Virus record (IMG/VR): IMGVR_UViG_3300028676_000003
Coordinates: 304,550 to 368,549 of that record
DNA length: 64,000 nt
Direction: 5' to 3' (one strand)
The translations under genes were made by a program, and so were the position numbers. The notes below the pieces were generated by a model that was not told the origin of the DNA, ran no database searches, and worked only from the letters and a program-made list of their open reading frames with translations. How positions within the stretch are numbered: the stretch's first letter is position 1; the number at the start of each line of letters is the position of its first letter. Positions 14,755-55,098 of the stretch are shown here, piece by piece.

Positions 14755-16338
14755 ATGAGCGGACAAAGAAACCTTGCTAGAAGATTAGAAAGAGCTATCA
14801 ACACTGGGAATATGGATGCTATTAAAGCAATGCAAACTCACTTGTTGAAGGTCCTTGTAAAACCACAAAACCTTATCCTAGCCTCAGATGGTTATAAATA
14901 CTCACACCACAGATTCTATGGTGCTGAAATGACCAAAATGATTTCGTATTGCGAATCAAGAGGTGGGAAATTCTCAGAGACCGTATTCTACGGCCTACAA
15001 ATATTCCTTAAACAATACTTAGAAGGAATCGCTATCACAACAGAAGAAATTGACCAAGCACAAGAAATCCTTGGTAGTCAATTAGGTATCTTCGGCCGTG
15101 ATGATGTATTCGACAGAAGCAAATTTGACTATATCGTTGAAAAACACGGTGGTAAGCTTCCAATCGCTATAAAAGCTGTTCCTGAAGGAACGGTTGTAAA
15201 TACCAAAAATGTATTATTCGTTATTGAGAGTCTTGACGATAATTGTGCATGGTTAACCAATTTCTTAGAAAGCCTTTTGCTTCAAGTTTGGTACCCAATT
15301 ACGGTTGCTACACTTTCAAGAGAAGTGAAAAAAATCGTATTGAAAGCGTTCAATAAATGCACATCTTATGATGAAGCAACTATTGATTTCCTTGTTCAAT
15401 TCGTATTAAACGACTTCGGATTCCGTGGAACGTCAAGCGTTCAGTCTGCCAGTGTTGGTGGTTCTGCTCACTTGGTTAACTTTAGAGGTTCTGATACCGT
15501 TGTTGCTAGTGACTTGATTAGAGAAATGTACAATACCAATACCGTTTACGGCTTAAGTATTCCTGCTACAGAACACTCTATTATGACACTTAAAGGTGAA
15601 GAAGGAGAGCTTGATATGATGAGAAGAGTACTTACAACATTCCCTACAGGACTTGTTGCTTGCGTATCTGATTCATACAATATCTTTAGAGCATGTTCTC
15701 AGTATTGGGGTCAAGACTTGATTGATTTAATCTTGAGCAGACCTGCGACACCTGGAAACCAACTAGTTATCCGTCCTGATTCAGGTCACGTAATCAGAAC
15801 ACTTAAGGAAATCTTTAGTATCTTGTTTGACAAGTTCGGTTATACAGTAAATGAAAAAGGTTACAAGGTATTGCCACCACAAGTACGTGTAATTCAAGGT
15901 GATGGTGTTAACTTAAACTCAATCATTGAAATTTACCAAATGCTTGAAGACGAAAAGATTTCTCCTGAGAACTTAGCGTTAGGTATGGGTGGTAAATTGC
16001 TTCAAGCTGATATCGATAGAGATACACAAAACTTTGCTACAAAGGCTTGTTCTGCTATCGTTGACGGTAAAAAGGTTGATATTATCAAGTCACCAACAGA
16101 AATGGATGCTGATGGTAACATCAGTCAATCATTCAAAAAATCTAAAAAAGGTGAACTTAAATTGGTCTTAAATGACGATGGAAGAACATACAGAACAGTA
16201 ACGTCATTAGACGCTGAGTATGACCACGTTAAAGATGAATTGGTTCCAGTTTTCAGAATGGGTGAAATCCTTGTTGACTATGGATTTGAAGAAATCCGTG
16301 AGAGAGCAAGGGTAAAAGACTACGAATTGGTAGCATAA
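14755..16338 (+). CDS. nadV: nicotinamide phosphoribosyltransferase (NAMPT/NadV)
   Basis: SDGYKYSH, LNDFGFRG, SIPATEHS, VSDSY, VIRPDSG, IQGDG, GMGGKLLQ, KKSKKG; start ATG 14755. Confidence 0.92.
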   Translation: MSGQRNLARRLERAINTGNMDAIKAMQTHLLKVLVKPQNLILASDGYKYSHHRFYGAEMTKMISYCESRGGKFSETVFYGLQIFLKQYLEGIAITTEEIDQAQEILGSQLGIFGRDDVFDRSKFDYIVEKHGGKLPIAIKAVPEGTVVNTKNVLFVIESLDDNCAWLTNFLESLLLQVWYPITVATLSREVKKIVLKAFNKCTSYDEATIDFLVQFVLNDFGFRGTSSVQSASVGGSAHLVNFRGSDTVVASDLIREMYNTNTVYGLSIPATEHSIMTLKGEEGELDMMRRVLTTFPTGLVACVSDSYNIFRACSQYWGQDLIDLILSRPATPGNQLVIRPDSGHVIRTLKEIFSILFDKFGYTVNEKGYKVLPPQVRVIQGDGVNLNSIIEIYQMLEDEKISPENLALGMGGKLLQADIDRDTQNFATKACSAIVDGKKVDIIKSPTEMDADGNISQSFKKSKKGELKLVLNDDGRTYRTVTSLDAEYDHVKDELVPVFRMGEILVDYGFEEIRERARVKDYELVA

Positions 16339-16541
16339 TGAAAGTCGGTGAATCAACCAAGGTTTTGATTAGACTAGCATTGTTCAATACTAGGGTATTA
16401 AGGAATTATAACGACCTTAAGGTTTATTTCATACAATGCCCTAGACTAGAACAACTCTATCTAAATGAATTAACTGAGGTCATGAATGTTGTAACAGGAG
16501 TTGATTTTTCAATTGATGAAATTTTATATGAAACTAGGTAA
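16338..16541 (+). CDS. MxLG-family micro-protein (MKVGE)
   Basis: coupled to nadV. Confidence 0.55.
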   Translation: MKVGESTKVLIRLALFNTRVLRNYNDLKVYFIQCPRLEQLYLNELTEVMNVVTGVDFSIDEILYETR

Positions 16542-16737
16542 ACAAATTAGTTGGAACAACCTTCTTAGTCATGGTAGTGTTTTCAGTTTTAAATACTCAA
16601 CGAGAGATGCTGAAGGTTATATCGCTGACTATTGGCGGTCCTGTGCTAAAAACAAGATTTATCTTGTTGAATTACCTGAAACTGATGTAGTTACAATATC
16701 TATTGAAACTTTTTTTGAAAAAAATTTGGTAGATTAA
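16528..16737 (+). CDS. MxLG-family micro-protein (MKLGK)
   Basis: ATGAAACTAGGTAAA start, overlaps upstream stop. Confidence 0.6.
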   Translation: MKLGKQISWNNLLSHGSVFSFKYSTRDAEGYIADYWRSCAKNKIYLVELPETDVVTISIETFFEKNLVD

Positions 16738-16748
16738 AAAATTATTTG

Positions 16749-16756
16749 TACCTTTG
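16749..16756 (+). promoter_or_regulatory. Bacteroidota -7 box TACCTTTG
   Basis: upstream AAAATTTGGTAGATTA (16721-16736) identical to 62962-62977. Confidence 0.75.
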
Positions 16757-16814
16757 TACCTGTAATTAAAAATATAAACTCTTGGGCGAGACATAAAACC
16801 CAAATCTTAAAATT

Positions 16815-17717
16815 ATGAAGAAAATACTCTTTTTACTAGCAGTATTCACTGCGTTATTCACGTCATGTTCGACGGATGATGAAAACACATCAAGTGTTAA
16901 AACGGCAAGTGTAGCTTTGACAACTGAAACAGCTTCAGTAACAGGAAAACAAGTTAAAAAACCTGCAAGCATTCCTGCTTGGGTTGATGGGTTTTCTGTA
17001 AAAGCTAAATCAAATGTATACGCAAACTATGAAGTTTCGGATAACTATACATTTGACCAACAAAATGGTGCGACAAATATCATCTTGGACAACGTAGCAT
17101 TAGGAAGCAATACATTCACAGCTTCAACTACAACAAATTCAGCGCAATTTTATCAATTGACAAATTACACTGCAAGTGGAAATTCATTAGATGCTAAATT
17201 CTTAGCAGGATTAAACAACATTAAAGCAGACAATCCTTATGTAATCTACACAGGTCTTGTTCCAAATGCAAATGTTACTGATTCTAATGTTAATTTGGTT
17301 ACAATTCCAATGACTACAGTTTACGGTCGTATCTTATCAGTGTTTCAATTGAATCAAGCTCTTAAAAATGCAGGTTACCAAGCTAAGGTTACTGTAACTA
17401 TCACAAGTCCAGTTGCTGGTTCTAACTCAGCGTTAGATGCTACAACTAAAAATGACGAATTAGTTACATTCAAATGGAGCAATTTAAAATCTGTTGCAGG
17501 TGCCAAGGTAACTTACAAGGTTGAAGTATCTAAGATTAATTCTCAAAGTACAATTGTAAAAACTTACACATTGACTCAAGATATCTTAGCTTCTAAATCA
17601 ATCTCTTGTTACTACACTATTACAGACGATGGTATTGTGTTGAAAAATCCAAACCAAGGTTTAAGCTTAAGCTTCCAAGATTGGGAAGAAGTTAATTGTA
17701 ATGATTGCAATAACTAA
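16815..17717 (+). CDS. lipoprotein, probably surface-exposed, beta-rich
   Basis: signal peptide II LFTSC followed by acidic STDDE. Confidence 0.8.
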   Translation: MKKILFLLAVFTALFTSCSTDDENTSSVKTASVALTTETASVTGKQVKKPASIPAWVDGFSVKAKSNVYANYEVSDNYTFDQQNGATNIILDNVALGSNTFTASTTTNSAQFYQLTNYTASGNSLDAKFLAGLNNIKADNPYVIYTGLVPNANVTDSNVNLVTIPMTTVYGRILSVFQLNQALKNAGYQAKVTVTITSPVAGSNSALDATTKNDELVTFKWSNLKSVAGAKVTYKVEVSKINSQSTIVKTYTLTQDILASKSISCYYTITDDGIVLKNPNQGLSLSFQDWEEVNCNDCNN

Positions 17718-17738
17718 GTAAAAAAGAAGAAATAATCA

Positions 17739-17772
17739 AAAACCCTTATCTTTAATAGGTAAGGGTTTTTTT
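17739..17772 (+). terminator. intrinsic terminator
   Basis: AAAACCCTTA/TAAGGGTTTT stem plus T-run. Confidence 0.75.
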
Positions 17773-17783
17773 AAAACTACCAA

Positions 17784-18385: not shown

Positions 18386-18583
18386 ATGAAGCTAGGAAAA
18401 CATATTGATTGGTTTTATTTCGAAGATTCTCTATTTAAAAGTCACTTCACACCTAGGCGTGAGGTATTAGATAGAGTAATGGAATATGTTAATAATAAAG
18501 ACCGTATGTCTACTCAAAGAAGACTAATGCTTGATATGGATTCTTGGCTTGATAATGAGTTTGAGTTAACCTTTAAAATATAA
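18386..18583 (+). CDS. MxLG-family micro-protein (MKLGK)
   Basis: ATGAAGCTAGGAAAA. Confidence 0.6.
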   Translation: MKLGKHIDWFYFEDSLFKSHFTPRREVLDRVMEYVNNKDRMSTQRRLMLDMDSWLDNEFELTFKI

Positions 18584-29761: not shown

Positions 29762-31342
29762 ATGAAGTTTAAAGAAGTTACACAAGCAGACATTGATTAT
29801 GCTAGAGAGGTATACTTGAATAAAGATATGTCTTGGGATGATAGAATGAACCTGTTAATAACACACTTTGGAAAATCAGAAAGAACAGTCCGTAAATGGT
29901 GTTCTGAGAAGTTTAATTTCAAAGAAAAGTCAGAAGTTGAGCCTGAACAATACGTAAAAGCTAAAACTAAGACGCATGATGAAACAAAAAAACGTTTCAT
30001 TATAACATGGGCACAGAATAACACACCTGTCCATAAGAAGTTCCTTAAAAATATTAAGGAATACGCTAATTTTATTGATGCCGACATTCACGTTATTGCT
30101 GGTAGATATAAGAACCCAACAAGTGTTTGGACCAATAACCAAGAATCAGAAGAATTTTGGGCTGACGAAATACAAGACTATTTAGATGCCAACAGGCACG
30201 ATATTCACCAATTCGTTTCAATCCTATCTGATATCAAGGTTCAACCAACTGCTGTTAATCCAATGACTGGAATGCAAGCTCTTAGCGGTGTTAATTCATG
30301 TATCTTTGGTTCTCCGAAGGTACAGATGGAAATGATACCTGTATTGGATGGAAACAAGCCTAAGATGATGCTTACGACTGGTTCGATTACAAAAAAGAAT
30401 TATACTGATTCAAAATCAGGTAAGGTTGGAGATTTTCACCACACATTCGGATTTGCTATTGTTGAAATCAAAGATGATGAAACATTCTTTGTAAGACAAG
30501 TAACAGCCGATGATAGAAGTGGTTCATTTAGTGATTTATATAACAGAGTTGAAGACGGGAAGGTTACTAAGCTAGAGTCTATTTCTGCTATTGTTTTGGG
30601 TGATGTTCACTACGGCCACCACGACCAAAAGGTACTAGACGCTACAATGACATTTATGGATAAGCTTGTACCTGAGCATGTTATCTTGCACGATGTATTT
30701 GATGGAGATTCAATTAGTCACCACCAAATGAAAAATCCTTTTATCCAATATGGTAAAGAGATGGCAGGAACCAACGACTTGGCGAAAGAGGTTAACATAA
30801 TGATGGAAGGACTTGAAGCTTTTGAAAAGTTCAAGAACATTGTAATCGTTAGAAGTAATCACGATGATTTCTTAGACCGTTGGCTTATCAATGAAGATTG
30901 GAAAAAGCAACCAACCTATAAGAACTCTAGGTTATACATGAAGTATTCAGATATATTGTTAGAGCAATATGGTACGGATATGAATAATGTATTAGGTGTT
31001 ATTCCTAAGCTTATTAACGAGAAGTTCCCTGAGTATAAGACACTTGGAAGAAGTGCTTCTTATAAGGTTAAGGGTTGGGAATTAGGCCAACATGGAGACT
31101 TTGGAACAAACGGTAGCCGTGGTTCATTACTACAGTTCCGTAAATTGAATACAAAGATTATTGTTGGACATTATCATAGTCCTGGGAGAAAGGATGGTGC
31201 TATTGCTGTTGGAACGTCAACTCACTTACGAGTAGGTTACAACAACGGTCCAAGTTCATGGTTACAGTCACACGTAATCATACATAATGACGGTAGAGCG
31301 CAACATATCAATTTTATTGATGGAGAGTTCACCACTTTTTAA
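29762..31342 (+). CDS. HTH + calcineurin-like phosphoesterase/nuclease, T5 A1-like
   Basis: ITWAQNNT, TTGSITKKNY, FHH, LGDVH, HDVFDG, SNHDD, HGD.G.NGSRGS, GHYHS. Confidence 0.6.
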   Translation: MKFKEVTQADIDYAREVYLNKDMSWDDRMNLLITHFGKSERTVRKWCSEKFNFKEKSEVEPEQYVKAKTKTHDETKKRFIITWAQNNTPVHKKFLKNIKEYANFIDADIHVIAGRYKNPTSVWTNNQESEEFWADEIQDYLDANRHDIHQFVSILSDIKVQPTAVNPMTGMQALSGVNSCIFGSPKVQMEMIPVLDGNKPKMMLTTGSITKKNYTDSKSGKVGDFHHTFGFAIVEIKDDETFFVRQVTADDRSGSFSDLYNRVEDGKVTKLESISAIVLGDVHYGHHDQKVLDATMTFMDKLVPEHVILHDVFDGDSISHHQMKNPFIQYGKEMAGTNDLAKEVNIMMEGLEAFEKFKNIVIVRSNHDDFLDRWLINEDWKKQPTYKNSRLYMKYSDILLEQYGTDMNNVLGVIPKLINEKFPEYKTLGRSASYKVKGWELGQHGDFGTNGSRGSLLQFRKLNTKIIVGHYHSPGRKDGAIAVGTSTHLRVGYNNGPSSWLQSHVIIHNDGRAQHINFIDGEFTTF

Positions 31343-35728: not shown

Positions 35729-36121
35729 ATGAGTAATAAAATAGAGATTAACATCGATTTTGATGGGACATGTGTCACACATGATTATCCGAGAGTTGGA
35801 GCCGATATCGGTTCAGTTAAGGTCTTAAAGAGACTGGTAGACAAAGGACATAAGCTTATCTTATTTACAATGAGAAGCGAAAAAAATAATAGCCTTATTG
35901 ATGCTATCGAATGGTTTGGAATACATGAAATTCCCTTATATGGAATACAGTCAAATCCGACCCAAAAGCATTGGACTTCAAGTCCTAAAAGCTACGCACC
36001 ACTTATGATTGATGATTCAGCAATAGGTTGTCCGTTGAAGTATGACCCTGAGATATCACCAAGAAAATTTGTTGATTGGGAGAAGGTTGAAGCCATGCTA
36101 GAAGAACAAGGATTAATATGA
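35729..36121 (+). CDS. HAD-like hydrolase
   Basis: IDFDGT, LILFTMR, MIDD. Confidence 0.8.
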   Translation: MSNKIEINIDFDGTCVTHDYPRVGADIGSVKVLKRLVDKGHKLILFTMRSEKNNSLIDAIEWFGIHEIPLYGIQSNPTQKHWTSSPKSYAPLMIDDSAIGCPLKYDPEISPRKFVDWEKVEAMLEEQGLI

Positions 36122-36333
36122 AACTAGGACTACATCAAACGTTAGATAACTATACGATTAAAGAAAGACATAACACTAATTTTAGTATTATGATTAGTAA
36201 ATTGAATCAAGCTGTAGATGATTATTATGATGTTTGCTGTGAATATGGATTATTCCAAAGGTTTTATTTAGATATAATTCCGTTAACTATAAGCTTCAAT
36301 ATTGAAGATTCGATGAGAAATGAAATTAGGTAA
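36118..36333 (+). CDS. MxLG-family micro-protein (MKLGL)
   Basis: ATGAAACTAGGA. Confidence 0.6.
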   Translation: MKLGLHQTLDNYTIKERHNTNFSIMISKLNQAVDDYYDVCCEYGLFQRFYLDIIPLTISFNIEDSMRNEIR

Positions 36334-36532
36334 AAGACTATTCTGTGAAGATTACATAACAACCAATACACTATTCAAGGAATTTAGAAAAGATTTAAAT
36401 AGTGATTATGAATGGTTTGATTGGCGAATTCACTATCAAGTAAGAAGAGATATCGGTCGGAGATTATACAATATGCCACTAGCTCGTTCATTTGAAAGTA
36501 TAAAAACAAATTTCAAAGGGCTTTGGTGGTAA
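36320..36532 (+). CDS. MxLG-family micro-protein (MKLGK)
   Basis: ATGAAATTAGGTAAA supplies upstream stop. Confidence 0.6.
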   Translation: MKLGKRLFCEDYITTNTLFKEFRKDLNSDYEWFDWRIHYQVRRDIGRRLYNMPLARSFESIKTNFKGLWW

Positions 36533-36544
36533 AAAACAAAAACA

Positions 36545-36877: not shown

Positions 36878-36878
36878 A

Positions 36879-37334
36879 ATGGCAAAGGTAGTTGCATCGG
36901 GTGTTTTTATCGTAAGAAAAGATAAGAAATTACTAATATGTCACCCAACACATCATGACAAGGACTTTTTCAGCATCCCGAAAGGAAAGGTAGAAAAAGG
37001 AGAGACATTTTTAGAAGGTGCGATACGTGAAACGTTTGAAGAAACAAACATTCAATTGAGTGGAAGTAATGATTTTCACGTATTTCCTTTAAAATCAGTG
37101 AACTATAAACATAATAAGAAGGTAATACATCCTTACTTATTTATTGAGAAGTCTTCATCTAAGATTAATTGGGATGAAGTGGAAATAAAATGTAATTCAA
37201 ATGTTCCTGAAGACCGTGGCGGTTTTCCTGAAATGGATGGTTTTAGATGGGTTGATTTAGAAGAGTCTCGTAAATTCTTGCATGATACACAAGTAGCTTG
37301 TATTGATTCAATTAACGAAATATTAAATAAATGA
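36879..37334 (+). CDS. Nudix hydrolase
   Basis: IPKGKVEKGETFLEGAIRETFEET; FPEMD...W. Confidence 0.9.
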   Translation: MAKVVASGVFIVRKDKKLLICHPTHHDKDFFSIPKGKVEKGETFLEGAIRETFEETNIQLSGSNDFHVFPLKSVNYKHNKKVIHPYLFIEKSSSKINWDEVEIKCNSNVPEDRGGFPEMDGFRWVDLEESRKFLHDTQVACIDSINEILNK

Positions 37335-37549
37335 CACTAGATTTACACGGGACCAAACACCAAGACGTTAGAGGCGTATTTGATACCTTTATGTTCACAG
37401 CAATGCAGTCTGATACTGTAGAAGTTACAATCATAACAGGCAATTCAACTTCAATGAAGAAGATTACCAATGAGTGTATCGAGGAATATGGATTTACCAT
37501 TCTTCCATTTGAACCTAATATGGGTAGCATTAAAATTGCAATTAAATGA
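37331..37549 (+). CDS. stand-alone Smr domain
   Basis: TLDLHG, IITGNS, N.G.I. Confidence 0.75.
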   Translation: MTLDLHGTKHQDVRGVFDTFMFTAMQSDTVEVTIITGNSTSMKKITNECIEEYGFTILPFEPNMGSIKIAIK

Positions 37550-37824
37550 CGGACATAACTAAAGTAATTCCACCTTGGTTTGTTTATATGTTACAGTGTT
37601 CTGACGGAACGTATTATACTGGAATAACAAACAACATTCAAAGAAGATTTATTGAACATAATGAATCTAAAAACAAAGGTGCGAAATACACAAGAACTCG
37701 AAGACCACTTAAGATTGTTTATACAACAGTATTTTTAACAAGAAGTGAAGCGAGCAAAGAAGAATATAGAATAAAAAGGCTCACAAGAGCGCAAAAAATA
37801 GAATTAATAAATAAAAACAAATAA
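37546..37824 (+). CDS. GIY-YIG nuclease (UPF0213-like)
   Basis: FVYML.CSDGTYYTGIT, R...HN..KGAKYT. Confidence 0.88.
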   Translation: MTDITKVIPPWFVYMLQCSDGTYYTGITNNIQRRFIEHNESKNKGAKYTRTRRPLKIVYTTVFLTRSEASKEEYRIKRLTRAQKIELINKNK

Positions 37825-39108
37825 ATGGCAGACGTAAAAAAAGTATGGAATGACGAAGGCGGTAGATTATACCTATCACATCCATCAAGAGAATTTCCTT
37901 TGTTGGAAAATGCAATCTACACAATTGGTGTAGACCAACACGGAAGATTTTTCCTTTCAAAATCTAGTGATGGATTCACTTTCGACTACAAAATCTATGG
38001 TCTTGAAACGAAATTGGTAGAAAGAGCGATTAAAACTTACAGAACGACAAAAGGAAACTTAGGTATCTTATTGAACGGTTTGAAAGGTACTGGTAAAACA
38101 GTAAGTTCTAAGATTATCGCTAATAAATTGGAGCAACCAATTATCCTTGTAGACACTAAGTACGATGGTGTTCAGTTCTTCTTGAACTCAATCACACAAG
38201 ACATTACTATCTTCATTGATGAGTACGAGAAGGTATTTGGTGAAGCGGCTGGAATGCTTACTATCATGGATGGTGCGTCTAACTCTCAACACCGTAGAGT
38301 ATTCTTATTAACTACAAACGAGTTGTATGTTGATAGAAACCTTATCCAAAGACCAGGACGTGTTCGTTACTTGAAAAAGTTCGACGACTTGAAACCTGAA
38401 ATCGTAGAAGAAATCATCGACGATTGCTTGATTCACAAACAATTCAAAGGTGAGTTGTTAACATTTATCTCAGCATTGGAAACAATCACTGTAGATATCG
38501 TTAAAGCGGTTATTAGTGAGGTTAACATCCACGAAGAAGGACCATCTGCATTCGAAGATATCTTTAACGTTAAGAAACTTAGCGGTAGATACAACGTTAT
38601 GATTAGAGATGAGAATAACGACATGGTTGAATTGGCTACAAGTGCCGCAATCTACCCAAGACCAACATTTGGCGACAGACACGTTGGACACCGTTTCGAG
38701 ATTGACAACCAAAACATTGGTACTATCTCAAGAGTAATCAATTGGACAACTGTTGAAGTTTCTCCTTTTGAAACATCTAAAGGTAAAAAATTAGGGTTTG
38801 ATAAACCAATCATCCTTAAAATGGTAGATGCCGATATTACAAACTCAACGTTTGCGTATGACGGTTACGGAGTTTCACTTTTGGGTGATACACCAAAACC
38901 TAAACAATCTAGCTTAGGTAAGTCTCTTTTAGAGAAGCTTGAGTCTGATAACGATGCATACTACAACGAAGATGGTGACGAAGTAGATTCTTCTCCACAA
39001 CCAGTGTCTGAAGCTTCTTATCAATTACAAGCTGAAAGTGCGGTTAAAGTAGCAAGCAACGGAGTAATCTCATTTGATTCAAGTGCAGGTACCCTTACAA
39101 AAGGATAA
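37825..39108 (+). CDS. AAA+ ATPase
   Basis: GLKGTGKT, IFIDEYEK, LTTN, RPGR. Confidence 0.88.
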   Translation: MADVKKVWNDEGGRLYLSHPSREFPLLENAIYTIGVDQHGRFFLSKSSDGFTFDYKIYGLETKLVERAIKTYRTTKGNLGILLNGLKGTGKTVSSKIIANKLEQPIILVDTKYDGVQFFLNSITQDITIFIDEYEKVFGEAAGMLTIMDGASNSQHRRVFLLTTNELYVDRNLIQRPGRVRYLKKFDDLKPEIVEEIIDDCLIHKQFKGELLTFISALETITVDIVKAVISEVNIHEEGPSAFEDIFNVKKLSGRYNVMIRDENNDMVELATSAAIYPRPTFGDRHVGHRFEIDNQNIGTISRVINWTTVEVSPFETSKGKKLGFDKPIILKMVDADITNSTFAYDGYGVSLLGDTPKPKQSSLGKSLLEKLESDNDAYYNEDGDEVDSSPQPVSEASYQLQAESAVKVASNGVISFDSSAGTLTKG

Positions 39109-39113
39109 AACTA

Positions 39114-39148
39114 AATGGTGTGTGGGTAAAACTACACACCGTTTCTAA
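39114..39148 (+). terminator. hairpin, probable terminator
   Basis: AATGGTGTGT/ACACACCGTT stem, weak T-tail. Confidence 0.55.
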
Positions 39149-39157
39149 TTTAAAGAA

Positions 39158-39634
39158 ATGAATAAAGCAATAGAAATACAAGCTCCAAATCAAGTTCCAT
39201 TGACACATGGCCTATATGTGTTCTTAGGTGGTTCTATTGAAATGGGTAAAGCTATAGAATGGCAAAAAGAGGTTATTGAAACTCTTAAGGATGAAAACAT
39301 TGTGTTTTTAAATCCTCGTAGAGATGATTGGAACTCTGAATGGACCCAAACCATAACTGACCCTAACTTTAATGAACAAGTTACTTGGGAATTAAAAAGA
39401 TTAGAAGAATCTGACTTTATTGTTATGGTTATTGACCCAAACACTATCTCACCAATTACTCTTTTAGAGATTGGACTTCACGCTAGAAGCGGAAAGATGA
39501 TTGTTTGTTGTCCTGATGGGTTTTTTAGAAAAGGAAATGTTGATGTTACTGGACATTTTTATGGATATCCAGTTGTTGAAACACTAGAAGAAGTAATAGA
39601 AGCAATTCGTGAAAAATTAAATGGCAAAAAGTAA
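39158..39634 (+). CDS. nucleoside 2-deoxyribosyltransferase-like protein, second copy
   Basis: VFLGGSIEMG, EWQ, NPRRDDW, QV.WEL, SPITLLEIG. Confidence 0.8.
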   Translation: MNKAIEIQAPNQVPLTHGLYVFLGGSIEMGKAIEWQKEVIETLKDENIVFLNPRRDDWNSEWTQTITDPNFNEQVTWELKRLEESDFIVMVIDPNTISPITLLEIGLHARSGKMIVCCPDGFFRKGNVDVTGHFYGYPVVETLEEVIEAIREKLNGKK

Positions 39635-40115
39635 AAGACAACACAAATTAAACACTGAGATTACAGCTAAAGAAGTTCGTGTAACTGACTTGGGTGTAGT
39701 AGCACTGGCAGTAGCTTTAAAAGAAGCTTCATCAAAGGAAATGGACCTTGTTCTTATCAATGAGAACGCAGTTCCACCAGTTTGTAAGATTATGAACTAT
39801 GAGAAGTTCATCTATGAGCAAAGCAAGAAACCTAAGAATAAGGGTCTTGATGTGAAAGAAATCAAATTGGGTCCTAATACGTCTGAAAATGACTTGGAGT
39901 ACCGTATCAAACACATGATTGATTTCTTGAAAAAGGGTCATAAGGTAAAGATAAGTCTTCAATTCAGAGGTCGTCAAATGCAACACATCAACATAGGACA
40001 AGAACAAATCCTAAAGCTAATGGTTGCAGTTGAAGAATTTGGAACAGCCGAGGCAATGCCTAAGTTAGAAGGAAAGAAAATGTTTGCTATGATTAAGCCA
40101 AAACCTAGCAAATAA
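39621..40115 (+). CDS. infC: translation initiation factor IF-3
   Basis: MDLVLI...PPVCKIMNYEKF.YE, KEIKL.P, FL.KG.KVK..L.FRGR. Confidence 0.92.
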   Translation: MAKSKRQHKLNTEITAKEVRVTDLGVVALAVALKEASSKEMDLVLINENAVPPVCKIMNYEKFIYEQSKKPKNKGLDVKEIKLGPNTSENDLEYRIKHMIDFLKKGHKVKISLQFRGRQMQHINIGQEQILKLMVAVEEFGTAEAMPKLEGKKMFAMIKPKPSK

Positions 40116-40117
40116 GG

Positions 40118-40146
40118 TTGACATAAATAAAAATTATGTTTATACT
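40118..40146 (+). promoter_or_regulatory. canonical TTGACA-17-TATACT promoter (overlaps -7-like TACTTGTG)
   Basis: exact hexamers with 17-nt spacer. Confidence 0.55.
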
Positions 40147-40151
40147 TGTGT

Positions 40152-40592
40152 ATGGAAGATTACATATACAACTATTTAACAGAGAATTTTAACGTTGAAA
40201 CCAGTCAGGTTGGAAACGATGGAATATATCGTTTAGACGACAAAAATACACACAAAACACCAATAGATGGGGATAAACTCGTAGCAGAGATTATCGCCAT
40301 TTTTGGCTTACAAGTAGAAGAGGTCTTACTTTTCATACATTTATGGAGCTGTAAGATAAAAAATGATATTGACTTAGATTTCTATTGGAAAAATAATTGG
40401 GAAGTTTTTCATAATGTAGAATTCCCAGTGGTTCATAGAGTTCATGCTACAACCATAGCTTCAGACCTTGTTCCTGTACAACCAATGTCTGCACCTAGTG
40501 ATATTCTTTACCATATTGAGACCATTGAACCTAAAGATACTCTTTATATCAAATATAAAAAGATACTTGAGGGATTACAACATATTTATTAA
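40152..40592 (+). CDS. hypothetical protein with T4 gp23 Gol-like segment
   Basis: FPVVHRVHATTIASDLVPVQPMSAP; N-terminal YL..NF motif shared with 45546 and 54091. Confidence 0.65.
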   Translation: MEDYIYNYLTENFNVETSQVGNDGIYRLDDKNTHKTPIDGDKLVAEIIAIFGLQVEEVLLFIHLWSCKIKNDIDLDFYWKNNWEVFHNVEFPVVHRVHATTIASDLVPVQPMSAPSDILYHIETIEPKDTLYIKYKKILEGLQHIY

Positions 40593-40622
40593 AAGATATT
40601 TGGCAAATCCAAATATTATTAA

Positions 40623-40630
40623 TACCTTTG
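40623..40630 (+). promoter_or_regulatory. Bacteroidota -7 box TACCTTTG
   Basis: TTTGGC upstream; ATG 3 nt downstream. Confidence 0.75.
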
Positions 40631-40633
40631 CAA

Positions 40634-41023
40634 ATGAAATTTAGAACGTATAAAACAAGAGAAGAGAAACTAAAGCAAACGCTTAAGGGACTTCTCTTAA
40701 ATAAAACAGTAAATCAAGATAATTTAGATGGAGTAATCAAGACTATCAATGACTACGAAAAGAATAACTTAGATACAATCGAAAAATTAAAGAAAGATAA
40801 GTTACTCGAAACAAAAAGAATAAGCGGTGCTTTAAAACAAACAATCAACGCTCATGGACCTATCACTAACAATCTTATTGGAAGTGCAACAAAACGAATC
40901 TATGGAGCCTTATTACATAAGCCTGAAAAGAGAACACATATAAACCTTGATATTGGTACATTTATCCTAATACTTATTGCAACAGTATTATTAACAGTCG
41001 CCAGTATCGTAATACTAATATAA
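40634..41023 (+). CDS. protein with C-terminal membrane anchor
   Basis: helical body plus terminal TM segment. Confidence 0.65.
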   Translation: MKFRTYKTREEKLKQTLKGLLLNKTVNQDNLDGVIKTINDYEKNNLDTIEKLKKDKLLETKRISGALKQTINAHGPITNNLIGSATKRIYGALLHKPEKRTHINLDIGTFILILIATVLLTVASIVILI

Positions 41024-41547
41024 TGAAAAAAATAAAAAAACTTGCTATTTTCGATTTTGACGGAACACTTGTTGACACTCCACTACCTGATATTGGGAGA
41101 CTTACGTATCAAGATAAGACGGGAAAAGCCTGGCCTCATGAGGGATGGTGGGGTAGAGAATTAAGCCTTGATATGGATATCTTTGATATGCCAATTGTTC
41201 CACAAGTAATTGAAGATTACCAAAAGGAGAAGTTAGAAGACTCTACTGCTCTAATTATGCTTACTGGTCGTATGACCAAGCTAAGGGATTCAGTTGTCAA
41301 GATTCTTGATTCACATAGTCTAGAATTTCATGAATATCACTACAACCGTGGTGGAGCTACTGAAGTTGCTAAGATTAAAACAATGGAACAACTTCTTGAA
41401 AAGTACCTTCATGTTGAAGAAATCGCAATGTGGGATGATAGAGAAGCGCATATCGCCATTTTTCAAAAATGGGGTGATGAACAAATCAGACAAGGAAATA
41501 TTAAGAGTTTCCAAATAACTCATATTCCAGCAGATAGACATAAATAA
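41023..41547 (+). CDS. Swiss-Army-knife RNA-repair-like HAD phosphatase
   Basis: IFDFDGTL..TP, WW, LTGR, MWDDR..H. Confidence 0.8.
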   Translation: MKKIKKLAIFDFDGTLVDTPLPDIGRLTYQDKTGKAWPHEGWWGRELSLDMDIFDMPIVPQVIEDYQKEKLEDSTALIMLTGRMTKLRDSVVKILDSHSLEFHEYHYNRGGATEVAKIKTMEQLLEKYLHVEEIAMWDDREAHIAIFQKWGDEQIRQGNIKSFQITHIPADRHK

Positions 41548-41551
41548 TACG

Positions 41552-41577
41552 AAAGCCACTGTTTTAGTGGCTTTTTT
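41552..41577 (+). terminator. intrinsic terminator
   Basis: AAAGCCACT/AGTGGCTTT plus T-run. Confidence 0.8.
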
Positions 41578-41602
41578 ATTTGCACAGAACCTAAATAAGT
41601 TG

Positions 41603-41610
41603 TACCTTTG
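41603..41610 (+). promoter_or_regulatory. Bacteroidota -7 box TACCTTTG
   Basis: TTTGCA upstream; ATG 3 nt downstream. Confidence 0.75.
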
Positions 41611-41613
41611 TAT

Positions 41614-41919
41614 ATGGATAAATATGAAAGACTAAAAGGAGAGTTAAGTGAAGTGAAACATGGGAAGATGAAAGCCTTTGGAAATTCCATGACACCCATA
41701 ATAAAAAGTGGGTCCCTGCTTACATTTAATTCTAAAGACAAATACGAAGTCAATGACATTGTATTTTGTAAGGTTAAAGGCCGATATATCGATGCTCATA
41801 AAATTATCAAGGTTGATGAACAAAAGGGTTATCTGATTGCTAATAACAAAGGACATGAAAATGGATGGACTAGAACCATCTTCGGTTATGTTGTTGAAGT
41901 AGAAGCTCCTAAGAAATGA
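41614..41919 (+). CDS. S24/S26 peptidase-like protein
   Basis: GNSM.P.I..G, DIV, HKI. Confidence 0.65.
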   Translation: MDKYERLKGELSEVKHGKMKAFGNSMTPIIKSGSLLTFNSKDKYEVNDIVFCKVKGRYIDAHKIIKVDEQKGYLIANNKGHENGWTRTIFGYVVEVEAPKK

Positions 41920-42074
41920 GACTAGGTAGAATAATAATCTCCTTTATTGAGACAAGAGAGATTGGTGATGATTTGAATCATCAAATCCTTGATAGAGTAA
42001 GTGTTTCTATTTGGGTTAGAAAACGAAAAAGCCTAATAGATGTAATAAAAATTAACCCAATTACTATATTATGA
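41916..42074 (+). CDS. MxLG-family micro-protein, 52 aa (MRLGR; not in track)
   Basis: ATGA overlap at both ends. Confidence 0.6.
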   Translation: MRLGRIIISFIETREIGDDLNHQILDRVSVSIWVRKRKSLIDVIKINPITIL

Positions 42075-42220
42075 AAATAGGTAAAATGATTGATTCAAAC
42101 GTTTCAAAAAGATGTATGGGTTATGAGATAGAGTCTCAAATGTTTAAGGAAGCTTCATCAGAAGTTTGGGGTCCTAGGATAACACGAGTATTTGAAATAA
42201 ATCGAATTAGATTTATATGA
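42071..42220 (+). CDS. MxLG-family micro-protein, 49 aa (MKIGK; not in track)
   Basis: ATGA overlap at both ends. Confidence 0.6.
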   Translation: MKIGKMIDSNVSKRCMGYEIESQMFKEASSEVWGPRITRVFEINRIRFI

Positions 42221-42378
42221 AACTAGGACTTAATGTATATGAAAAGGCTTACAAGGCTAAAACAAGCATCCATGATTTACTTTTAAGTGAAAGAATTGAA
42301 ATGCCTTGCTTTGGTATCTTAGAGTGGATAGAACAAACTAGTATGTTCGTCGCTATTCCTTTGGTTAGAATATTATAA
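42217..42378 (+). CDS. MxLG-family micro-protein, 53 aa (MKLGL; not in track)
   Basis: ATGAAACTAGGA. Confidence 0.6.
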   Translation: MKLGLNVYEKAYKAKTSIHDLLLSERIEMPCFGILEWIEQTSMFVAIPLVRIL

Positions 42379-42393
42379 TTTAAAATAAAGAAA

Positions 42394-42906
42394 ATGATTG
42401 ATAATTCAATAAGAGAAACACTATCTAAATTAGATGGTAATTATAAATTTAACGATTTGTTAACATTTATGGAAGACTCAGGTATAACCTTTTATGACAG
42501 AGGGTTAAACAATGCTTTGGGTCTTACAACACTTGATGGAATTTATTTAGATTTGAGTATGATGCGTTATTTTGGTGATAGGCTTACATTTTTTATTATC
42601 CTTCACGAAATAGCTCATTATAAGAGAATTGCGAGATACGGTGGTAATTGGTTGATTGAAAAATTAAGCGTTGCTGACTACGAAACGTTCCTAAATGGAA
42701 TTTATGAAGAAGAAATCATTGCAGATAGATATGCTTGTCAAATGTTCTATAGATTGAATAGAGATATTTATTTATGGAAACATACTCAACAATTAAACTT
42801 GGTTGAAAATCAAGAGAAGTATCAAGTTGCGGCAAATACGTATTACGGCAAGATTCAAAACGACGAAACAAAATACAGATTATTAATTGAACAGTTTATT
42901 AAATGA
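42394..42906 (+). CDS. HExxH metallopeptidase-like (ImmA/IrrE-like)
   Basis: ILHEIAH ... EE..AD.YA. Confidence 0.65.
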   Translation: MIDNSIRETLSKLDGNYKFNDLLTFMEDSGITFYDRGLNNALGLTTLDGIYLDLSMMRYFGDRLTFFIILHEIAHYKRIARYGGNWLIEKLSVADYETFLNGIYEEEIIADRYACQMFYRLNRDIYLWKHTQQLNLVENQEKYQVAANTYYGKIQNDETKYRLLIEQFIK

Positions 42907-51301: not shown

Positions 51302-51490
51302 ATGGATATAGGTAAAAGGATTGACGGTGATATAGGCATAGGTAAAATTCGTAATCGTCTATCTGATGAATCAACAAGACAGGTTATTTACTCTCTTGAT
51401 ATCGATGTTTTCACTGATTTCTTTAACGAATTATACGATGTTGAAGAAATAACGTTAATTATTGAAGAATCATTTGGAATATCAATTTAA
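51302..51490 (+). CDS. MxLG-family micro-protein (MDIGK)
   Basis: ATGGATATAGGTAAA. Confidence 0.55.
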   Translation: MDIGKRIDGDIGIGKIRNRLSDESTRQVIYSLDIDVFTDFFNELYDVEEITLIIEESFGISI

Positions 51491-51495
51491 TTTAT

Positions 51496-51503
51496 TACCT
51501 TTG
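51496..51503 (+). promoter_or_regulatory. Bacteroidota -7 box TACCTTTG
   Basis: TTTGG upstream. Confidence 0.7.
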
Positions 51504-51514
51504 TAATCTAAATA

Positions 51515-51865: not shown

Positions 51866-52224
51866 GAAAACTATTAATCGCAGTGGCTTTATTAAGCCTT
51901 ATTGGTTGTAGAGAAGAAGATGATAGAACAACAAACAGCGTCACTATCAGCAAAGAAGAATACAATCAACTCAGAAATACAAATGCTGATTACCCTAAAC
52001 ACTTTGACCTTATTGGTTATTCAAGGTTTAATGGTTATGAAAATGCAATCATTATGGGTTCTGATGGTCATGAATACCTTATAACTAGAAGTGGTTATAA
52101 CAATGAATCTCAGAATCACTATATTGAATGTAAGAAATGCATGGCGAAAGAACAACGTATTGAAGAATTATTGATGGAGATTATCAAAAACACATCAAAA
52201 GACTCTACAAGTGTTGTTAGGTAA
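51862..52224 (+). CDS. lipoprotein, paralog B
   Basis: LIGC lipobox; GSDGHEY, HYIECKKC. Confidence 0.7.
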   Translation: MRKLLIAVALLSLIGCREEDDRTTNSVTISKEEYNQLRNTNADYPKHFDLIGYSRFNGYENAIIMGSDGHEYLITRSGYNNESQNHYIECKKCMAKEQRIEELLMEIIKNTSKDSTSVVR

Positions 52225-52381
52225 AGTAGTCACTACTGTAACAATCAGTCATATGCTTGATTTCATTGCAATCTTACCATCAACGGAAAGAAAGAGTCTT
52301 ACAGTTATTGCAGGTAGAGACACTTGGAAAATTGTAATCGATGCTGTTAATATAGGAATAATAACTAGAATAAAATACTAA
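52211..52381 (+). CDS. MxLG-family micro-protein, 56 aa, GTG start (MLLGK; not in track)
   Basis: GTGTTGTTAGGTAAA; stop overlaps smpB ATG. Confidence 0.5.
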   Translation: MLLGKVVTTVTISHMLDFIAILPSTERKSLTVIAGRDTWKIVIDAVNIGIITRIKY

Positions 52382-52821: not shown

Positions 52822-52825
52822 AGCT

Positions 52826-53161: not shown

Positions 53162-53179
53162 TTTAAAATATATTATTAC

Positions 53180-54091: not shown

Positions 54092-54411
54092 TGAAAGAAA
54101 TCATACACAAATTTTTAACAGATAACTTCTATATGGATTTATCTACCTTTTCTTCTTATTGCCTGAAAGAGTCAGGTAATCATAATAGTATTTATTTAAA
54201 ACTAATATACAATAAGTTAGGTAAAATATTTGGGTATGAGCCTGACAGTGATGAATTGATTGATATTGTCTCAGAATGGAACACCCAACAAATCGCTATA
54301 CTAACCCGTAAGATTAACCATATAAAGTACAGGTTGTATAGCGATACTGGTTCTGATAAGGTGGAATTAGATGAGATGTGCAAGCTTATTAAAGAATTTG
54401 AATTTGAGTAA
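54091..54411 (+). CDS. hypothetical protein (YL..NF family)
   Basis: IIHKFLTDNF. Confidence 0.6.
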   Translation: MKEIIHKFLTDNFYMDLSTFSSYCLKESGNHNSIYLKLIYNKLGKIFGYEPDSDELIDIVSEWNTQQIAILTRKINHIKYRLYSDTGSDKVELDEMCKLIKEFEFE

Positions 54412-54463
54412 TAAGCGGTGTACACATTTGTGTACATAGAGTGTTTTTTTATGCTAAACTAGA

Positions 54464-54471
54464 TATTTATA
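54464..54471 (+). promoter_or_regulatory. putative second-class promoter TATTTATA
   Basis: 18 nt upstream of ATG 54490. Confidence 0.4.
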
Positions 54472-54489
54472 ATAAAGAAAACACATCAG

Positions 54490-54888
54490 ATGGAAAAAAA
54501 TATAATCAAAGAAAAGTTAAGAGAATCTTTATTCAGTCGTATTAAAGAGACTAACAAGACTAGCGGAGAACAACACCCGCAAGAGCATAAAGATGAAGAA
54601 GGAACAGGGAATGGAACCTTTAACGACTTAGATAAGGAAGAGAAAAAGAAAGTTCAAACCCTTACAAAGAAAATCAAGAACGCAACACAAGGACCAAGCA
54701 AGTTACTTAAGTTATCTCAAGTAATGGATGCGGCTGGTGTAGGTGATGCAGACAATGCTACTGACAGGTCAGCAATCGGTAAGGCCGTATCAGGTAAGCC
54801 TGATGCAGACGGTAAGATTAGACACTTGAATGTAAAGCAAGCTAACGCCATGGGGAAAGTCGTAGACAACCCTGTTGCATTTAAATAA
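54490..54888 (+). CDS. hypothetical protein with IKxxLRExL N-terminal tag
   Basis: IKEKLRESL resembles IKQRLREVL of the 2H protein. Confidence 0.7.
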   Translation: MEKNIIKEKLRESLFSRIKETNKTSGEQHPQEHKDEEGTGNGTFNDLDKEEKKKVQTLTKKIKNATQGPSKLLKLSQVMDAAGVGDADNATDRSAIGKAVSGKPDADGKIRHLNVKQANAMGKVVDNPVAFK

Positions 54889-54893
54889 TACAC

Positions 54894-54923
54894 AAAAGCC
54901 TCGAAGAAATTCGAGGTTTTTTT
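54894..54923. terminator. bidirectional intrinsic terminator
   Basis: AAAAGCCTCGAA-GAAA-TTCGAGGTTTTTTT between convergent genes. Confidence 0.8.
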
Positions 54924-55098
54924 ATACATCTATTTTATGTGTGTTGGGAATTTTTGAATATACTGTAGTCCACATATCTTTTATTTTATATCTAACTAAT
55001 ACATGAATGATTTTATTGACTTCAACCCTAACTTCTTTACAAACAACGTTATCAACAGCGTCTGAGAAATCATCATATAATTCTTTACCTAAATCCAT
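54922..55098 (-). CDS. MxLG-family micro-protein (MDLGK)
   Basis: ATG at 55098 with its own promoter. Confidence 0.6.
   Translation of the reverse strand: MDLGKELYDDFSDAVDNVVCKEVRVEVNKIIHVLVRYKIKDMWTTVYSKIPNTHKIDV

What the first reader, a model, noticed from the sequence alone, without database searches (positions are those of the whole stretch)
16338..55098. Dispersed family of 11 hypervariable micro-ORFs sharing an ATG-NNN-NTA-GGW start junction
Seen: ORFs of 49-71 aa at 16338, 16528, 18386, 36118, 36320, 41916, 42071, 42217, 51302, 52211 and 55098(-) all start M-x-[LIV]-G and are otherwise dissimilar; four are below the ORF-track cutoff. In 10 of 11 the third codon is NTA (CTA x5, TTA x3, ATA x2), so TAGG is conserved at DNA level. 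The junction ...TAGGTAA has stops in both alternative frames and supplies the upstream gene's stop at 16541, 36333 and 52224. Members sit in tandem runs (2, 2, 3), often at operon ends. Inference: a cassette-like system of small effectors whose shared 5' motif is a recombination/insertion site, an RNA-level translational control site or a short targeting peptide. I cannot name a described equivalent.
Basis: partly seen in the sequence, partly recalled or inferred. Interest (0 to 1): 0.75.

Follow-up and report, generated by a model that had tools for sequence, protein, structure and literature searches.

The report
Hundred-copy small-protein family in jumbo phage
The eleven mini-genes are real and are outliers of a family of about 110 small, fast-changing proteins that fills a 21-kb tandem array in a 369-kb peat-soil phage; all begin Met-Lys-Leu-Gly-Lys, whole genes are gained and lost between strains, and no function is known.

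Summary
Observation confirmed and much enlarged. All 11 ORFs exist as described. The window is the right end of a 368,549-bp phage contig. The same contig carries about 95 more members in one tandem array (12,656-33,884), about 110 in all.

Members are real genes. Orthologues in a soil strain give dN/dS of 0.13-0.27 for the best-kept cassettes and 0.40 overall. Genes overlap by 4, 10 or 14 nt, and the motif itself supplies the upstream stop.

The array changes cassette by cassette. Of 31 cassettes in the soil strain, 19 have orthologues and 12 do not, and breakpoints fall at the start motif. The window members occupy variable slots in a conserved backbone.

Related phages carry the same start followed by (D/N)-S-V-x tetrapeptide repeats. 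These are predicted as one long helix, and the same repeats occur in phage DUF6745 proteins.

TAGG is not universal. Other lineages use GCY or any Leu codon, so the conserved unit is the peptide M-K-Φ-G-K-x-I. In this phage, wobble A follows partly from a general A-rich, Shine-Dalgarno-free start region (72% expected, 96% seen).

There is no integrase, attC-like repeat, Rfam, Pfam or PHROG match, and no paper. Function is unknown; an early anti-host or anti-defence role is inferred only.

The parts
16338..16541 (+). Family member, 67 aa, MKVGE. Codon 3 is GTC, the only window member without NTA. Its stop is the TAA of the next member's GGTAAA (14-nt overlap).
16528..16737 (+). Family member, 69 aa, MKLGKQI; start ATGAAACTAGGTAAA.
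18386..18583 (+). Solitary family member, 65 aa, MKLGKHI. No homologue other than itself among 5.8 billion proteins.
36118..36333 (+). Family member, 71 aa, MKLGL. It has an ATGA overlap with the upstream 132-aa gene and ends ..NEIR in the next member's GGTAAA. It lies in a variable slot between backbone genes.
36320..36532 (+). Family member, 70 aa, MKLGKRL. Weak body similarity to array member 13711. AF2 with 8 paralogues predicts helices 11-50 and 53-69 at low confidence (pLDDT 63.5).
41916..42074 (+). First of a run of three, 52 aa, MRLGR. Follows a Peptidase S24-like ORF (41608-41919).
42071..42220 (+). Second of the run of three, 49 aa, MKIGK; ATGA overlaps on both sides.
42217..42378 (+). 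Third of the run of three, 53 aa, MKLGL.
51302..51490 (+). Solitary family member, 62 aa, MDIGKRI.
52211..52381 (+). Probable member with a GTG start (GTGTTGTTAGGTAAA), 56 aa. Its GGTAAA supplies the stop of the upstream 120-aa ORF at 52224.
54922..55098 (-). The only minus-strand member, 58 aa, MDLGKEL. It fills a gap between + strand genes.
54899..54916 (-). Terminator-like hairpin followed by a T-run, directly behind the minus-strand member.

Best explanation
The 11 ORFs are scattered members of one very large, fast-evolving family of small (48-84 aa), probably alpha-helical phage proteins. The family has about 110 copies in this 369-kb phage, and about 95 of them form one same-strand tandem array just beyond the window's end.

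Origin (inferred from relatives). The family derives from proteins made of the leader M-K-(L/I/V/A)-G-K-x-I followed by (D/N)-S-V-x tetrapeptide repeats. This is the same repeat module found in phage DUF6745 proteins. In this phage the bodies have diverged beyond recognition while the leader is kept.

Why the start looks conserved at DNA level. Three layers add up:
1. Protein-level selection on the leader fixes ATG, the T of codon 3 and GG.
2. The phage starts translation without Shine-Dalgarno sequences, from A-rich, unstructured start regions. That pushes wobble positions of codons 2-8 towards A, hence NTA, GGA and AAA.
3. Genes are packed for termination-reinitiation coupling. The motif puts stops in both other frames (ATGA and TAG in +1, the TAA of GGTAAA in +2), so an upstream cassette in either of the other two frames ends on its neighbour's start.

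Consequence. The 15-25 nt identical at every junction is a ready substrate for unequal or microhomology recombination. That duplicates, deletes or swaps whole cassettes in frame and seeds copies into variable slots elsewhere, including the window.

Shown: the family, that it is coding and under purifying selection, the junction anatomy, the SD-free A-rich starts, and cassette-wise turnover.

Inferred: the recombination mechanism, early expression, and an anti-host or anti-defence role for the proteins.
For: Family size and array:
- 122 pattern hits in the contig; 108 + strand ORFs of 48-84 aa starting M-x-[LIVM]-G.

Coding:
- A collinear orthologous array in a soil strain (L194) gives dN/dS of 0.13-0.27 for the best-conserved cassettes and 0.40 over 1212 codons.

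Junctions:
- Overlaps are -4 (48 cases), -10 (12) and -14 (10); no junction has both genes in the same frame.
- The C-termini ..W[IN] and ..NEIR follow from these overlaps.

Translation:
- SD-like words upstream of long genes occur in 1.2% against 7% at random positions. Start regions are G-depleted and A-rich at -14..-8, -5 and -3. This resembles Bacteroidetes start regions (PMC6847099).
- Wobble A is raised in codons 2-8 of all genes.
- Starts fold much more weakly than gene middles: -2.1 against -5.0 kcal/mol, p = 8e-14.

Peptide rather than DNA:
- L037 uses ATG AAA GCY GGT AAA; L115 uses CTC, CTG, CTT, CTA and TTA.

Origin:
- G002, G001, L104, L092 and L109 carry the leader plus period-4 repeats. 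L104 mixes repeat bodies and unique bodies.
- An HMM of the repeat bodies ranks 9 G000 members above every decoy.
- The profile finds 2417 proteins, the best being repeat + DUF6745 proteins.
- A weak DUF6745 homologue and its conserved companion gene lie directly before the array.
- AF2 predicts a single helix, residues 3-58, pLDDT 88.

Turnover:
- 12 of 31 L194 cassettes have no G000 counterpart, at least 12 G000 cassettes are absent from L194, and one extra cassette sits exactly at a junction.
- 12 of 32 alignment breakpoints fall within -8..+15 nt of a start (p = 4e-4).
- Window members occupy variable slots.
- The family is absent from five relatives, three of them complete genomes.
Against: - Wobble A at codon 3 is 96% in the family against 72% at codon 3 of other genes (p = 5e-12). 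The ramp alone therefore does not explain it.
- The out-of-frame-stop idea is not specifically supported: TAG is kept equally whether or not ATGA already supplies a +1 stop (82/86 against 18/19).
- Paralogues are not independent samples.
- No expression, proteomic or host data exist.
- The homodimer prediction gave no answer.
- The structure of a window member is of low confidence.
- The DUF6745 match in G000 is below Pfam's cut-off.
- The host phylum is inferred only from start-region features.
Confidence: 0.6

Rival explanations
1. The leader M-K-L-G-K-x-I is an address tag. It would send many unrelated small proteins to one destination, such as the prohead for co-injection, a phage compartment, or a chaperone or protease, as the capsid targeting sequence does for the T4 internal proteins.
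For: The leader is conserved as a peptide across lineages that use different codons, on bodies that are otherwise unrelated. [quoted passage not shown] Most members are basic, median pI 9.55.
Against: There is no conserved cleavage residue after the leader in the start logo. More than 100 cargoes per phage has no precedent. The genes lie in an early-type, same-strand region beside NAD-salvage, nuclease and T5 A1-like genes. No virion data exist. This rival is compatible with the best explanation rather than opposed to it.
Confidence: 0.25
2. The motif is a DNA site for dedicated site-specific recombination, so the array is an integron-like cassette store.
For: Cassettes lie in one orientation, appear to lack promoters, and show whole-cassette indels with breakpoints at the motif. 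Copies occur in variable slots.
Against: No tyrosine integrase in the genome, with all 14 control genomes positive. The only recurrent repeat is the 16-25-nt junction; there are no attC-like inverted repeats. Lineage L037 forms arrays without TAGG. Ordinary unequal crossing-over at 15-25 nt of identity is enough to explain the data.
Confidence: 0.12
3. TAGG(W) is an RNA-level signal: a regulator or nuclease site, or an internal Shine-Dalgarno-like pause or loading site that controls translation of each cassette.
For: Wobble A at codon 3 exceeds the general ramp, 96% against 72%. An invariant GG sits in otherwise G-depleted start regions. AGGA and AGGT are Shine-Dalgarno core words (own knowledge).
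Against: GGG and GGC are not depleted at codon 4: 14 of 131 against 7.7% genome usage. Relatives keep the peptide with other codons. The phage avoids SD words upstream of its genes, and Bacteroidia ribosomes do not read SD (PMC7797042, abstract seen). No Rfam match and no local structure.
Confidence: 0.12
4. The ORFs are not genes, and the array is non-coding repetitive DNA that happens to stay open.
For: No homologues with a known function. Several other metagenome hits to the same word pair are plainly non-coding tandem repeats.
Against: About 100 consecutive open frames of 48-84 codons lie on one strand with start-stop overlaps. Orthologues give dN/dS of 0.13-0.27. The start regions match those of the phage's other genes.
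Confidence: 0.03

Closest known systems
Hyperplastic regions of T4-type phages with PeSL cassettes (Arbiol et al. 2010, PMC2839356; Comeau et al. 2014, PMC4122927)
   Same: Clusters of small, non-essential ORFan genes in phage early regions. A short conserved motif at every gene boundary. Insertions, deletions and replacements between close relatives occur at those motifs.
   Different: A PeSL is an intergenic sigma-70 promoter plus a stem-loop terminator, so each ORF is its own transcription unit and the ORFs are unrelated to each other. Here the shared motif is the first 12-25 nt of the coding sequence, no promoter or terminator motif recurs, genes overlap (ATGA), and the ORFs are paralogues sharing a leader peptide.
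T4 internal proteins sharing a capsid targeting sequence (PMC3012670)
   Same: Diverse small proteins that share only a short conserved N-terminal sequence and lie in a variable locus. They are thought to counter host defences.
   Different: The T4 sequence is about 10 residues and is removed by the prohead protease (own knowledge). There are about three such proteins per phage, not about 110. Here no cleavage motif is seen and there is no evidence of packaging.
Phage proteins with (D/N)-S-V-(R/W/G) tetrapeptide repeats and a C-terminal Pfam DUF6745 domain (uncharacterised)
   Same: The small proteins of G002, G001 and L104 are made of the same period-4 repeat. A weak DUF6745 homologue and its companion gene directly precede the G000 array.
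   Different: The small proteins lack the DUF6745 domain and the N-terminal domain, and have their own M-K-L-G-K leader. The G000 bodies have lost the repeat. No function is known for DUF6745.
Integron cassette arrays
   Same: Long one-way arrays of small ORFs without evident promoters, with cassette-wise gain and loss.
   Different: No integrase, no attC, and no space between cassettes. The boundary is a coding motif.
Tandem multigene expansions of large DNA viruses ('genomic accordions', ASFV multigene families; own knowledge)
   Same: Tandem amplification followed by divergence of host-interaction genes, with copy number differing between strains.
   Different: Those are eukaryotic viruses with larger proteins and far fewer copies per family. 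No comparable case of about 100 copies in a phage was found in the literature searches run here.

Membership tests
PeSL regulatory cassettes (T4-type hyperplastic regions) | Conserved sigma-70-like early promoter at each cassette boundary | tested here: not met
   The logo of 110 starts has no conserved upstream hexamers. Promoter-like sites in the array number 57 against 65.7 expected.
PeSL regulatory cassettes (T4-type hyperplastic regions) | Stem-loop terminator at each boundary | tested here: not met
   Only 7 terminator-like sites in 12.5 kb of array, three of them behind non-family islands. Genes overlap by 4-14 nt.
PeSL regulatory cassettes (T4-type hyperplastic regions) | Indels and replacements between close relatives occur at the conserved boundary motif | tested here: met
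   L194 against G000 shows whole-cassette differences. 12 of 32 breakpoints lie at starts, p = 4e-4.
T4-type internal proteins with a capsid targeting sequence | Shared N-terminal peptide on otherwise unrelated small proteins | tested here: met
   The M-K-(L/I/V/A)-G-K-x-I leader is shared, while 94 of 108 bodies are BLASTP singletons.
T4-type internal proteins with a capsid targeting sequence | Prohead-protease cleavage motif ending the leader | tested here: not met
   No conserved Glu or other fixed residue after position 7 in the start logo or the sequences.
T4-type internal proteins with a capsid targeting sequence | Proteins packaged in the virion and injected | not testable with these tools
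   Needs virion proteomics.
Integron gene cassettes | IntI tyrosine recombinase beside the array | tested here: not met
   PF00589 finds nothing in the 369-kb genome, with 14 of 14 controls positive.
Integron gene cassettes | attC imperfect inverted repeat at each cassette's 3' end | tested here: not met
   No recurrent inverted repeats; only the 16-25-nt direct junction motif recurs.
Pfam DUF6745 proteins | DUF6745 domain above the gathering score | tested here: not met
   The small ORFs have no Pfam hit. The neighbouring 336-aa ORF scores 16-17.7 bits against a cut-off of 27.
Pfam DUF6745 proteins | (D/N)-S-V-x tetrapeptide repeat tract | tested here: met
   Met for the relatives G002, G001, L104 and L092. 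For G000 only a faint remnant is left.
Known RNA families (Rfam 15) | Match at the gathering score | tested here: not met
   0 matches in the window, L007 and L008.

The most novel reading that the evidence does not exclude
A jumbo phage keeps a library of more than 100 different small helical proteins, all carrying one seven-residue N-terminal address. They are encoded as translationally coupled cassettes whose shared junction lets whole genes be duplicated, lost and swapped in frame. This would be a phage-borne, recombination-driven repertoire of anti-host or anti-defence binders, comparable in logic to integron cassette stores or the T4 internal proteins but built differently and far larger.
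Probability: 0.25. Interest if true: 0.85.

Novelty: new variant of a known kind. Interest (0 to 1): 0.68.

Why it matters
About one in six + strand ORFs of this phage, some 5% of its DNA, belongs to a single family that is absent from Pfam and PHROGs and from every paper found by the literature searches run here. Yet the ESM Atlas and metagenomes hold many viral clusters like it.

The family gives a clean natural system for three questions:
- How multigene families expand and turn over in phages, because the cassettes have exact in-frame junctions.
- How polycistronic messages are translated without Shine-Dalgarno sequences.
- What the uncharacterised DUF6745 tetrapeptide-repeat module does.

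If the proteins prove to be counter-defence factors, the array would be a large, ready-made catalogue of them.

Tried and rejected
- **Alternative genetic code.** Reading TGA or TAG as sense barely changes the long ORFs, and only about 10 weak candidates carry in-frame TAG. Rejected, although the phage carries an amber-suppressor tRNA.
- **Shared fold by sequence.** All-against-all BLASTP and iterated HMMs unite only 8 of 108 bodies.
- **Family libraries and literature.** Pfam and PHROGs on window members and on repeat-type relatives gave only noise. Searches for MKLGK, the repeat strings and DUF6745 found no paper.
- **Near-identical phages.** None in the phage collection.
- **Word-index protein searches.** These returned only the query itself, for a repeat-type protein and for window ORF 18386.
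- **Tandem-pair DNA pattern in metagenomes and prokaryote genomes.** Most hits are chance or unrelated non-coding tandem repeats (L047, L050, L053, L080, L084). No true array was found in any prokaryote genome.
- **Homodimer prediction.** No answer.
- **dN/dS among G000 paralogues.** Saturated and uninformative; the orthologue comparison replaced it.
- **Need for TAG as a stop.** No difference between ATGA and ATGG members.


Full report
**1.

All 11 ORFs are present with the stated coordinates, lengths and first residues.
- Ten have NTA as codon 3: CTA x5, TTA x3, ATA x2. The exception, 16338, has GTC.
- 52211 starts with GTG, not ATG.
- The TAA inside GGTAAA ends the upstream ORF at 16541, 36333 and 52224.

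ATGNNNNTAGGW occurs 12 times in the window against 4.8 expected, and nine of those are starts of 49-71-aa ORFs. Among non-overlapping + strand ORFs of the window, 8 of 29 small ones and 0 of 94 larger ones start M-x-[LIVM]-G (p = 4e-6).

**2. The window shows only the fringe of the family**

The window is bases 304,550-368,549 of a single 368,549-bp virus contig with 33.6% GC. It comes from a peat metagenome.

The whole contig has 122 pattern matches. About 95 lie in one dense + strand array at 12,656-33,884. If the genome is circular or circularly permuted, which was not tested, the array would lie about 13 kb past the window's end.

With any wobble base allowed at codon 3, there are 108 + strand ATG ORFs of 48-84 aa starting M-x-[LIVM]-G. 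Adding the GTG and minus-strand members and a few that have lost Gly4 (MKLI.., MKLV.., MILK..) gives about 110-115 genes and about 18 kb. Other scattered copies lie at 8,759, at 226,043 and 226,845, and at 237,473 and 237,625, the last two between tRNA genes.

Three short islands of non-family genes interrupt the array. Each ends in a terminator-like hairpin, after which the array resumes.

**3. They are genes**

About 100 consecutive open frames on one strand with start-stop overlaps are not expected by chance in 34% GC DNA.

The direct test is an orthologous array from a soil metagenome (L194, 6,412 bp, 31 cassettes). Nineteen cassettes have collinear G000 orthologues at 29-92% amino-acid identity. 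dN/dS is 0.13-0.27 for the best conserved and 0.40 over 1212 concatenated codons.

Bodies are nevertheless very diverse:
- With residues 1-7 removed, 94 of 108 are BLASTP singletons.
- HMM iteration unites only 8.
- Window ORF 18386 has no homologue but itself among 5.8 billion proteins.
- Most members are basic (median pI 9.55), while 25 are acidic.

**4. Anatomy of the junction**

Distances between neighbours are quantised.

| Overlap | Junctions | Upstream stop | Resulting upstream C-terminus |
|---|---|---|---|
| -4 | 48 | TGA of ATGA | - |
| -10 | 12 | the motif's TAG | ..W-[I/N] |
| -14 | 10 | TAA of GGTAAA | ..N-E-I-R |

No junction has the two genes in the same frame. Family stops are TGA 57, TAA 30 and TAG 21, whereas about 90% of long genes end in TAA.

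Upstream of the ATG there is no conserved promoter, Shine-Dalgarno or hairpin signal, only A-richness. This fits long polycistronic messages read by termination-reinitiation. That reading is an inference; there are no expression data.

**5. How this phage starts translation**

- SD-like words upstream of 323 long genes are depleted: 1.2% against 7% at random positions.
- G is at 5-10% from -20 to -1, and A peaks at -14..-8, -5 and -3. This pattern is described for Bacteroidetes, which lack SD sequences and use A at -3 and low mRNA structure (PMC6847099).
- All genes show an A-rich wobble ramp in codons 2-8.
- 50-nt windows centred on family starts fold far more weakly than gene middles: -2.1 against -5.0 kcal/mol, p = 8e-14.

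The host phylum is inferred from these features only.

**6. Is TAGG a DNA-level signal?**

For a nucleotide-level constraint:
- In G000 the wobble base of codon 3 is A in 103 of 107 members, while the first base of that codon varies (TTA 53, CTA 36, ATA 23, GTA 4).
- In gene bodies NTA makes up only 36% of Leu, Ile and Val codons. At codon 3 of non-family genes it already reaches 72%.
- The family's 96% still exceeds that (p = 5e-12, though paralogues are not independent).

Against a nucleotide-level constraint:
- GGG and GGC are not avoided at codon 4.
- TAG is kept equally whether or not ATGA already gives a +1 stop.
- Other lineages keep the peptide with other codons. L037 has ATG AAA GCY GGT AAA AAC ATT (MKAGKNI). 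L115 uses CTC, CTG, CTT, CTA and TTA. L104 has ATT in 6 of 22.

The conserved unit is therefore the peptide M-K-(L/I/V/A)-G-K-x-I. TAGG is its encoding in very A-rich start regions, possibly reinforced by the value of a +1-frame stop. That last point is unproven.

**7. Relatives and origin**

A scan for two motif copies 150-180 nt apart found two arrays in IMG/VR.
- G002 is a 69-kb fragment with at least 41 copies at its end. It is a true relative: its ATPase is 64% identical to the window's.
- G001 is a 161-kb record with about 10 copies.

There the proteins are MILGKSIKDKV followed by 8-20 repeats of (D/N)-S-V-(R/W/S/Y), ending PKIKE or PKIKL.

Metagenomes add L104, L092/L108, L109 (N-Q-V-x repeats) and L115. 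L104 holds repeat-type and unique-type bodies side by side, which bridges the two forms.

Links between the repeat type and G000:
- An HMM of the repeat bodies ranks nine G000 members, one of them window ORF 41916, above all of three-fold more numerous decoys.
- G000 bodies keep a faint period-4 hydrophobic signal.

Structure and wider family:
- AF2 with 43 sequences predicts one helix, residues 3-58, pLDDT 88.
- Window ORF 36320 is predicted helical but at low confidence.
- The profile finds 2417 proteins at E <= 1e-3 among 1.84 billion. The best are 200-600-aa proteins built of an N-domain, the same repeats and a Pfam DUF6745 domain. One of them lies in a phage replication module.
- In G000 a 336-aa weak DUF6745 homologue without repeats, and its conserved 128-aa companion, lie directly before the array.
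- The ESM Atlas lists many virus-only clusters without Pfam families that resemble the repeat-type protein.
- No true array was found in prokaryote genomes.

**8. Cassette dynamics**

Five relatives, three of them complete genomes of 362-482 kb, have only background counts of the motif.

Around the window's ATPase and nuclease the gene order is conserved in seven relatives. The family members at 36118/36320 and at 41916-42217 fill slots that hold a different small ORF or nothing in the others, including G002.

L194 against G000:
- 12 of 31 cassettes have no G000 counterpart.
- At least 12 G000 cassettes are missing from L194.
- One extra 177-nt cassette sits exactly between the orthologues of 26996 and 27199.
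- dS ranges from 0.04 to 1.2 between neighbouring cassettes, so their histories are mosaic.

When contigs of that soil sample are laid on 6 kb of the array, 12 of 32 ends of alignable pieces fall within -8..+15 nt of a cassette start (p = 4e-4).

The same sample shares 28% of 31-mers with window 36000-42400. That implies roughly 96% identity if its coverage is complete. Alignable array patches are 86-88% identical. The array therefore evolves faster than the backbone.

G000 has no tyrosine integrase. The only recurrent repeat in the array is the 16-25-nt junction. General or microhomology recombination at the junction is the simplest mechanism; this is an inference.

**9. Mechanism and rivals**

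Best supported: a paralogous family of small helical proteins in translationally coupled cassettes. The shared start is a conserved leader peptide written in the phage's A-rich, SD-free start code, and its identity at every junction drives in-frame cassette turnover.

The surrounding region is all on one strand. It holds NAD-salvage genes, a nuclease, ATPases and a T5 A1-like 'DNA transfer' protein, so early expression and a host-takeover or counter-defence role are plausible but not shown.

Rivals:
- The address-tag reading (T4 capsid-targeting analogue, PMC3012670) is compatible and untested.
- A dedicated recombination site and an RNA control element are each disfavoured by specific tests.
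- 'Not genes' is rejected.

**10. Comparison with known systems, and novelty**

The closest described architecture is the PeSL-bounded ORFan cassettes of T4-type hyperplastic regions (PMC2839356, PMC4122927). The behaviour at gene boundaries is the same. The kind of boundary differs, being coding rather than promoter plus terminator, and here the genes are paralogues.

The family is not in Pfam, PHROGs or Rfam and appears in no paper found. I rate it a new variant of a known kind: tandem multigene expansion with cassette shuffling in a phage variable region. It is unusual for its size, its leader and its junction design.

**Limits.** There are no expression, host or protein data. Host, timing and function are inferred. 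Several statistics treat paralogues as independent.

Noticed in passing
G000:C1:228804-228879 (outside the window); tRNA block at about 225-302 kb: The phage carries 62 tRNA genes, one of them with anticodon CUA (an amber suppressor). About 90% of long genes end in TAA. No convincing in-frame TAG recoding was found.
   Followed up: partly
whole genome; window gene starts: Gene starts lack Shine-Dalgarno words (1.2% against 7% at random positions). They are G-poor and A-rich at -14..-8, -5 and -3, as in Bacteroidota. This is the only host clue.
   Followed up: partly
G000:C1:11167-12177 and 12222-12608 (L038): A weak DUF6745 homologue without the repeat tract and a 128-aa companion gene lie directly before the array. 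The same gene pair occurs in an unrelated phage contig (L040), where the DUF6745 protein carries the tetrapeptide repeats.
   Followed up: partly
window 41608-41919: A 103-aa Peptidase S24-like (LexA/UmuD-type) ORF lies directly upstream of the run of three family members.
   Followed up: no
window 12373-13422 and 14641-16338: An NMN-adenylyltransferase/Nudix-like ORF and a nicotinamide phosphoribosyltransferase form an NAD-salvage pair. The first family pair starts at the transferase's stop codon.
   Followed up: no
window 29762-31342: A 526-aa ORF matches the PHROG 'DNA transfer protein' with a metallophosphoesterase region (T5 A1-like). This fits an early region.
   Followed up: no
G000:C1:237473-237819: Two family members are inserted between tRNA genes (tRNA-Asn at 237373-237460 and a CAU-anticodon tRNA at 237823-237897).
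   Followed up: no
L050, L053, L080, L084, L047 (metagenome loci): Unrelated non-coding tandem repeats of 12-57 nt contain ATGAAAYTAGG and produce false hits. L047 is a 12-nt microsatellite that reads MRLGMKLG.
   Followed up: partly
L194 (Logan SRR29208549 contig) against G000:C1:25756-32625: Synonymous divergence differs 30-fold between neighbouring orthologous cassettes (dS 0.04 to 1.2). This suggests recombination among diverged strains inside the array.
   Followed up: partly
window 20050, 43271, 49616(-): Three matches to ATGNNNNTAGGW are not family members: one is an internal Met of a 178-aa ORF, and the other two open frames of only 6 and 26 codons.
   Followed up: yes
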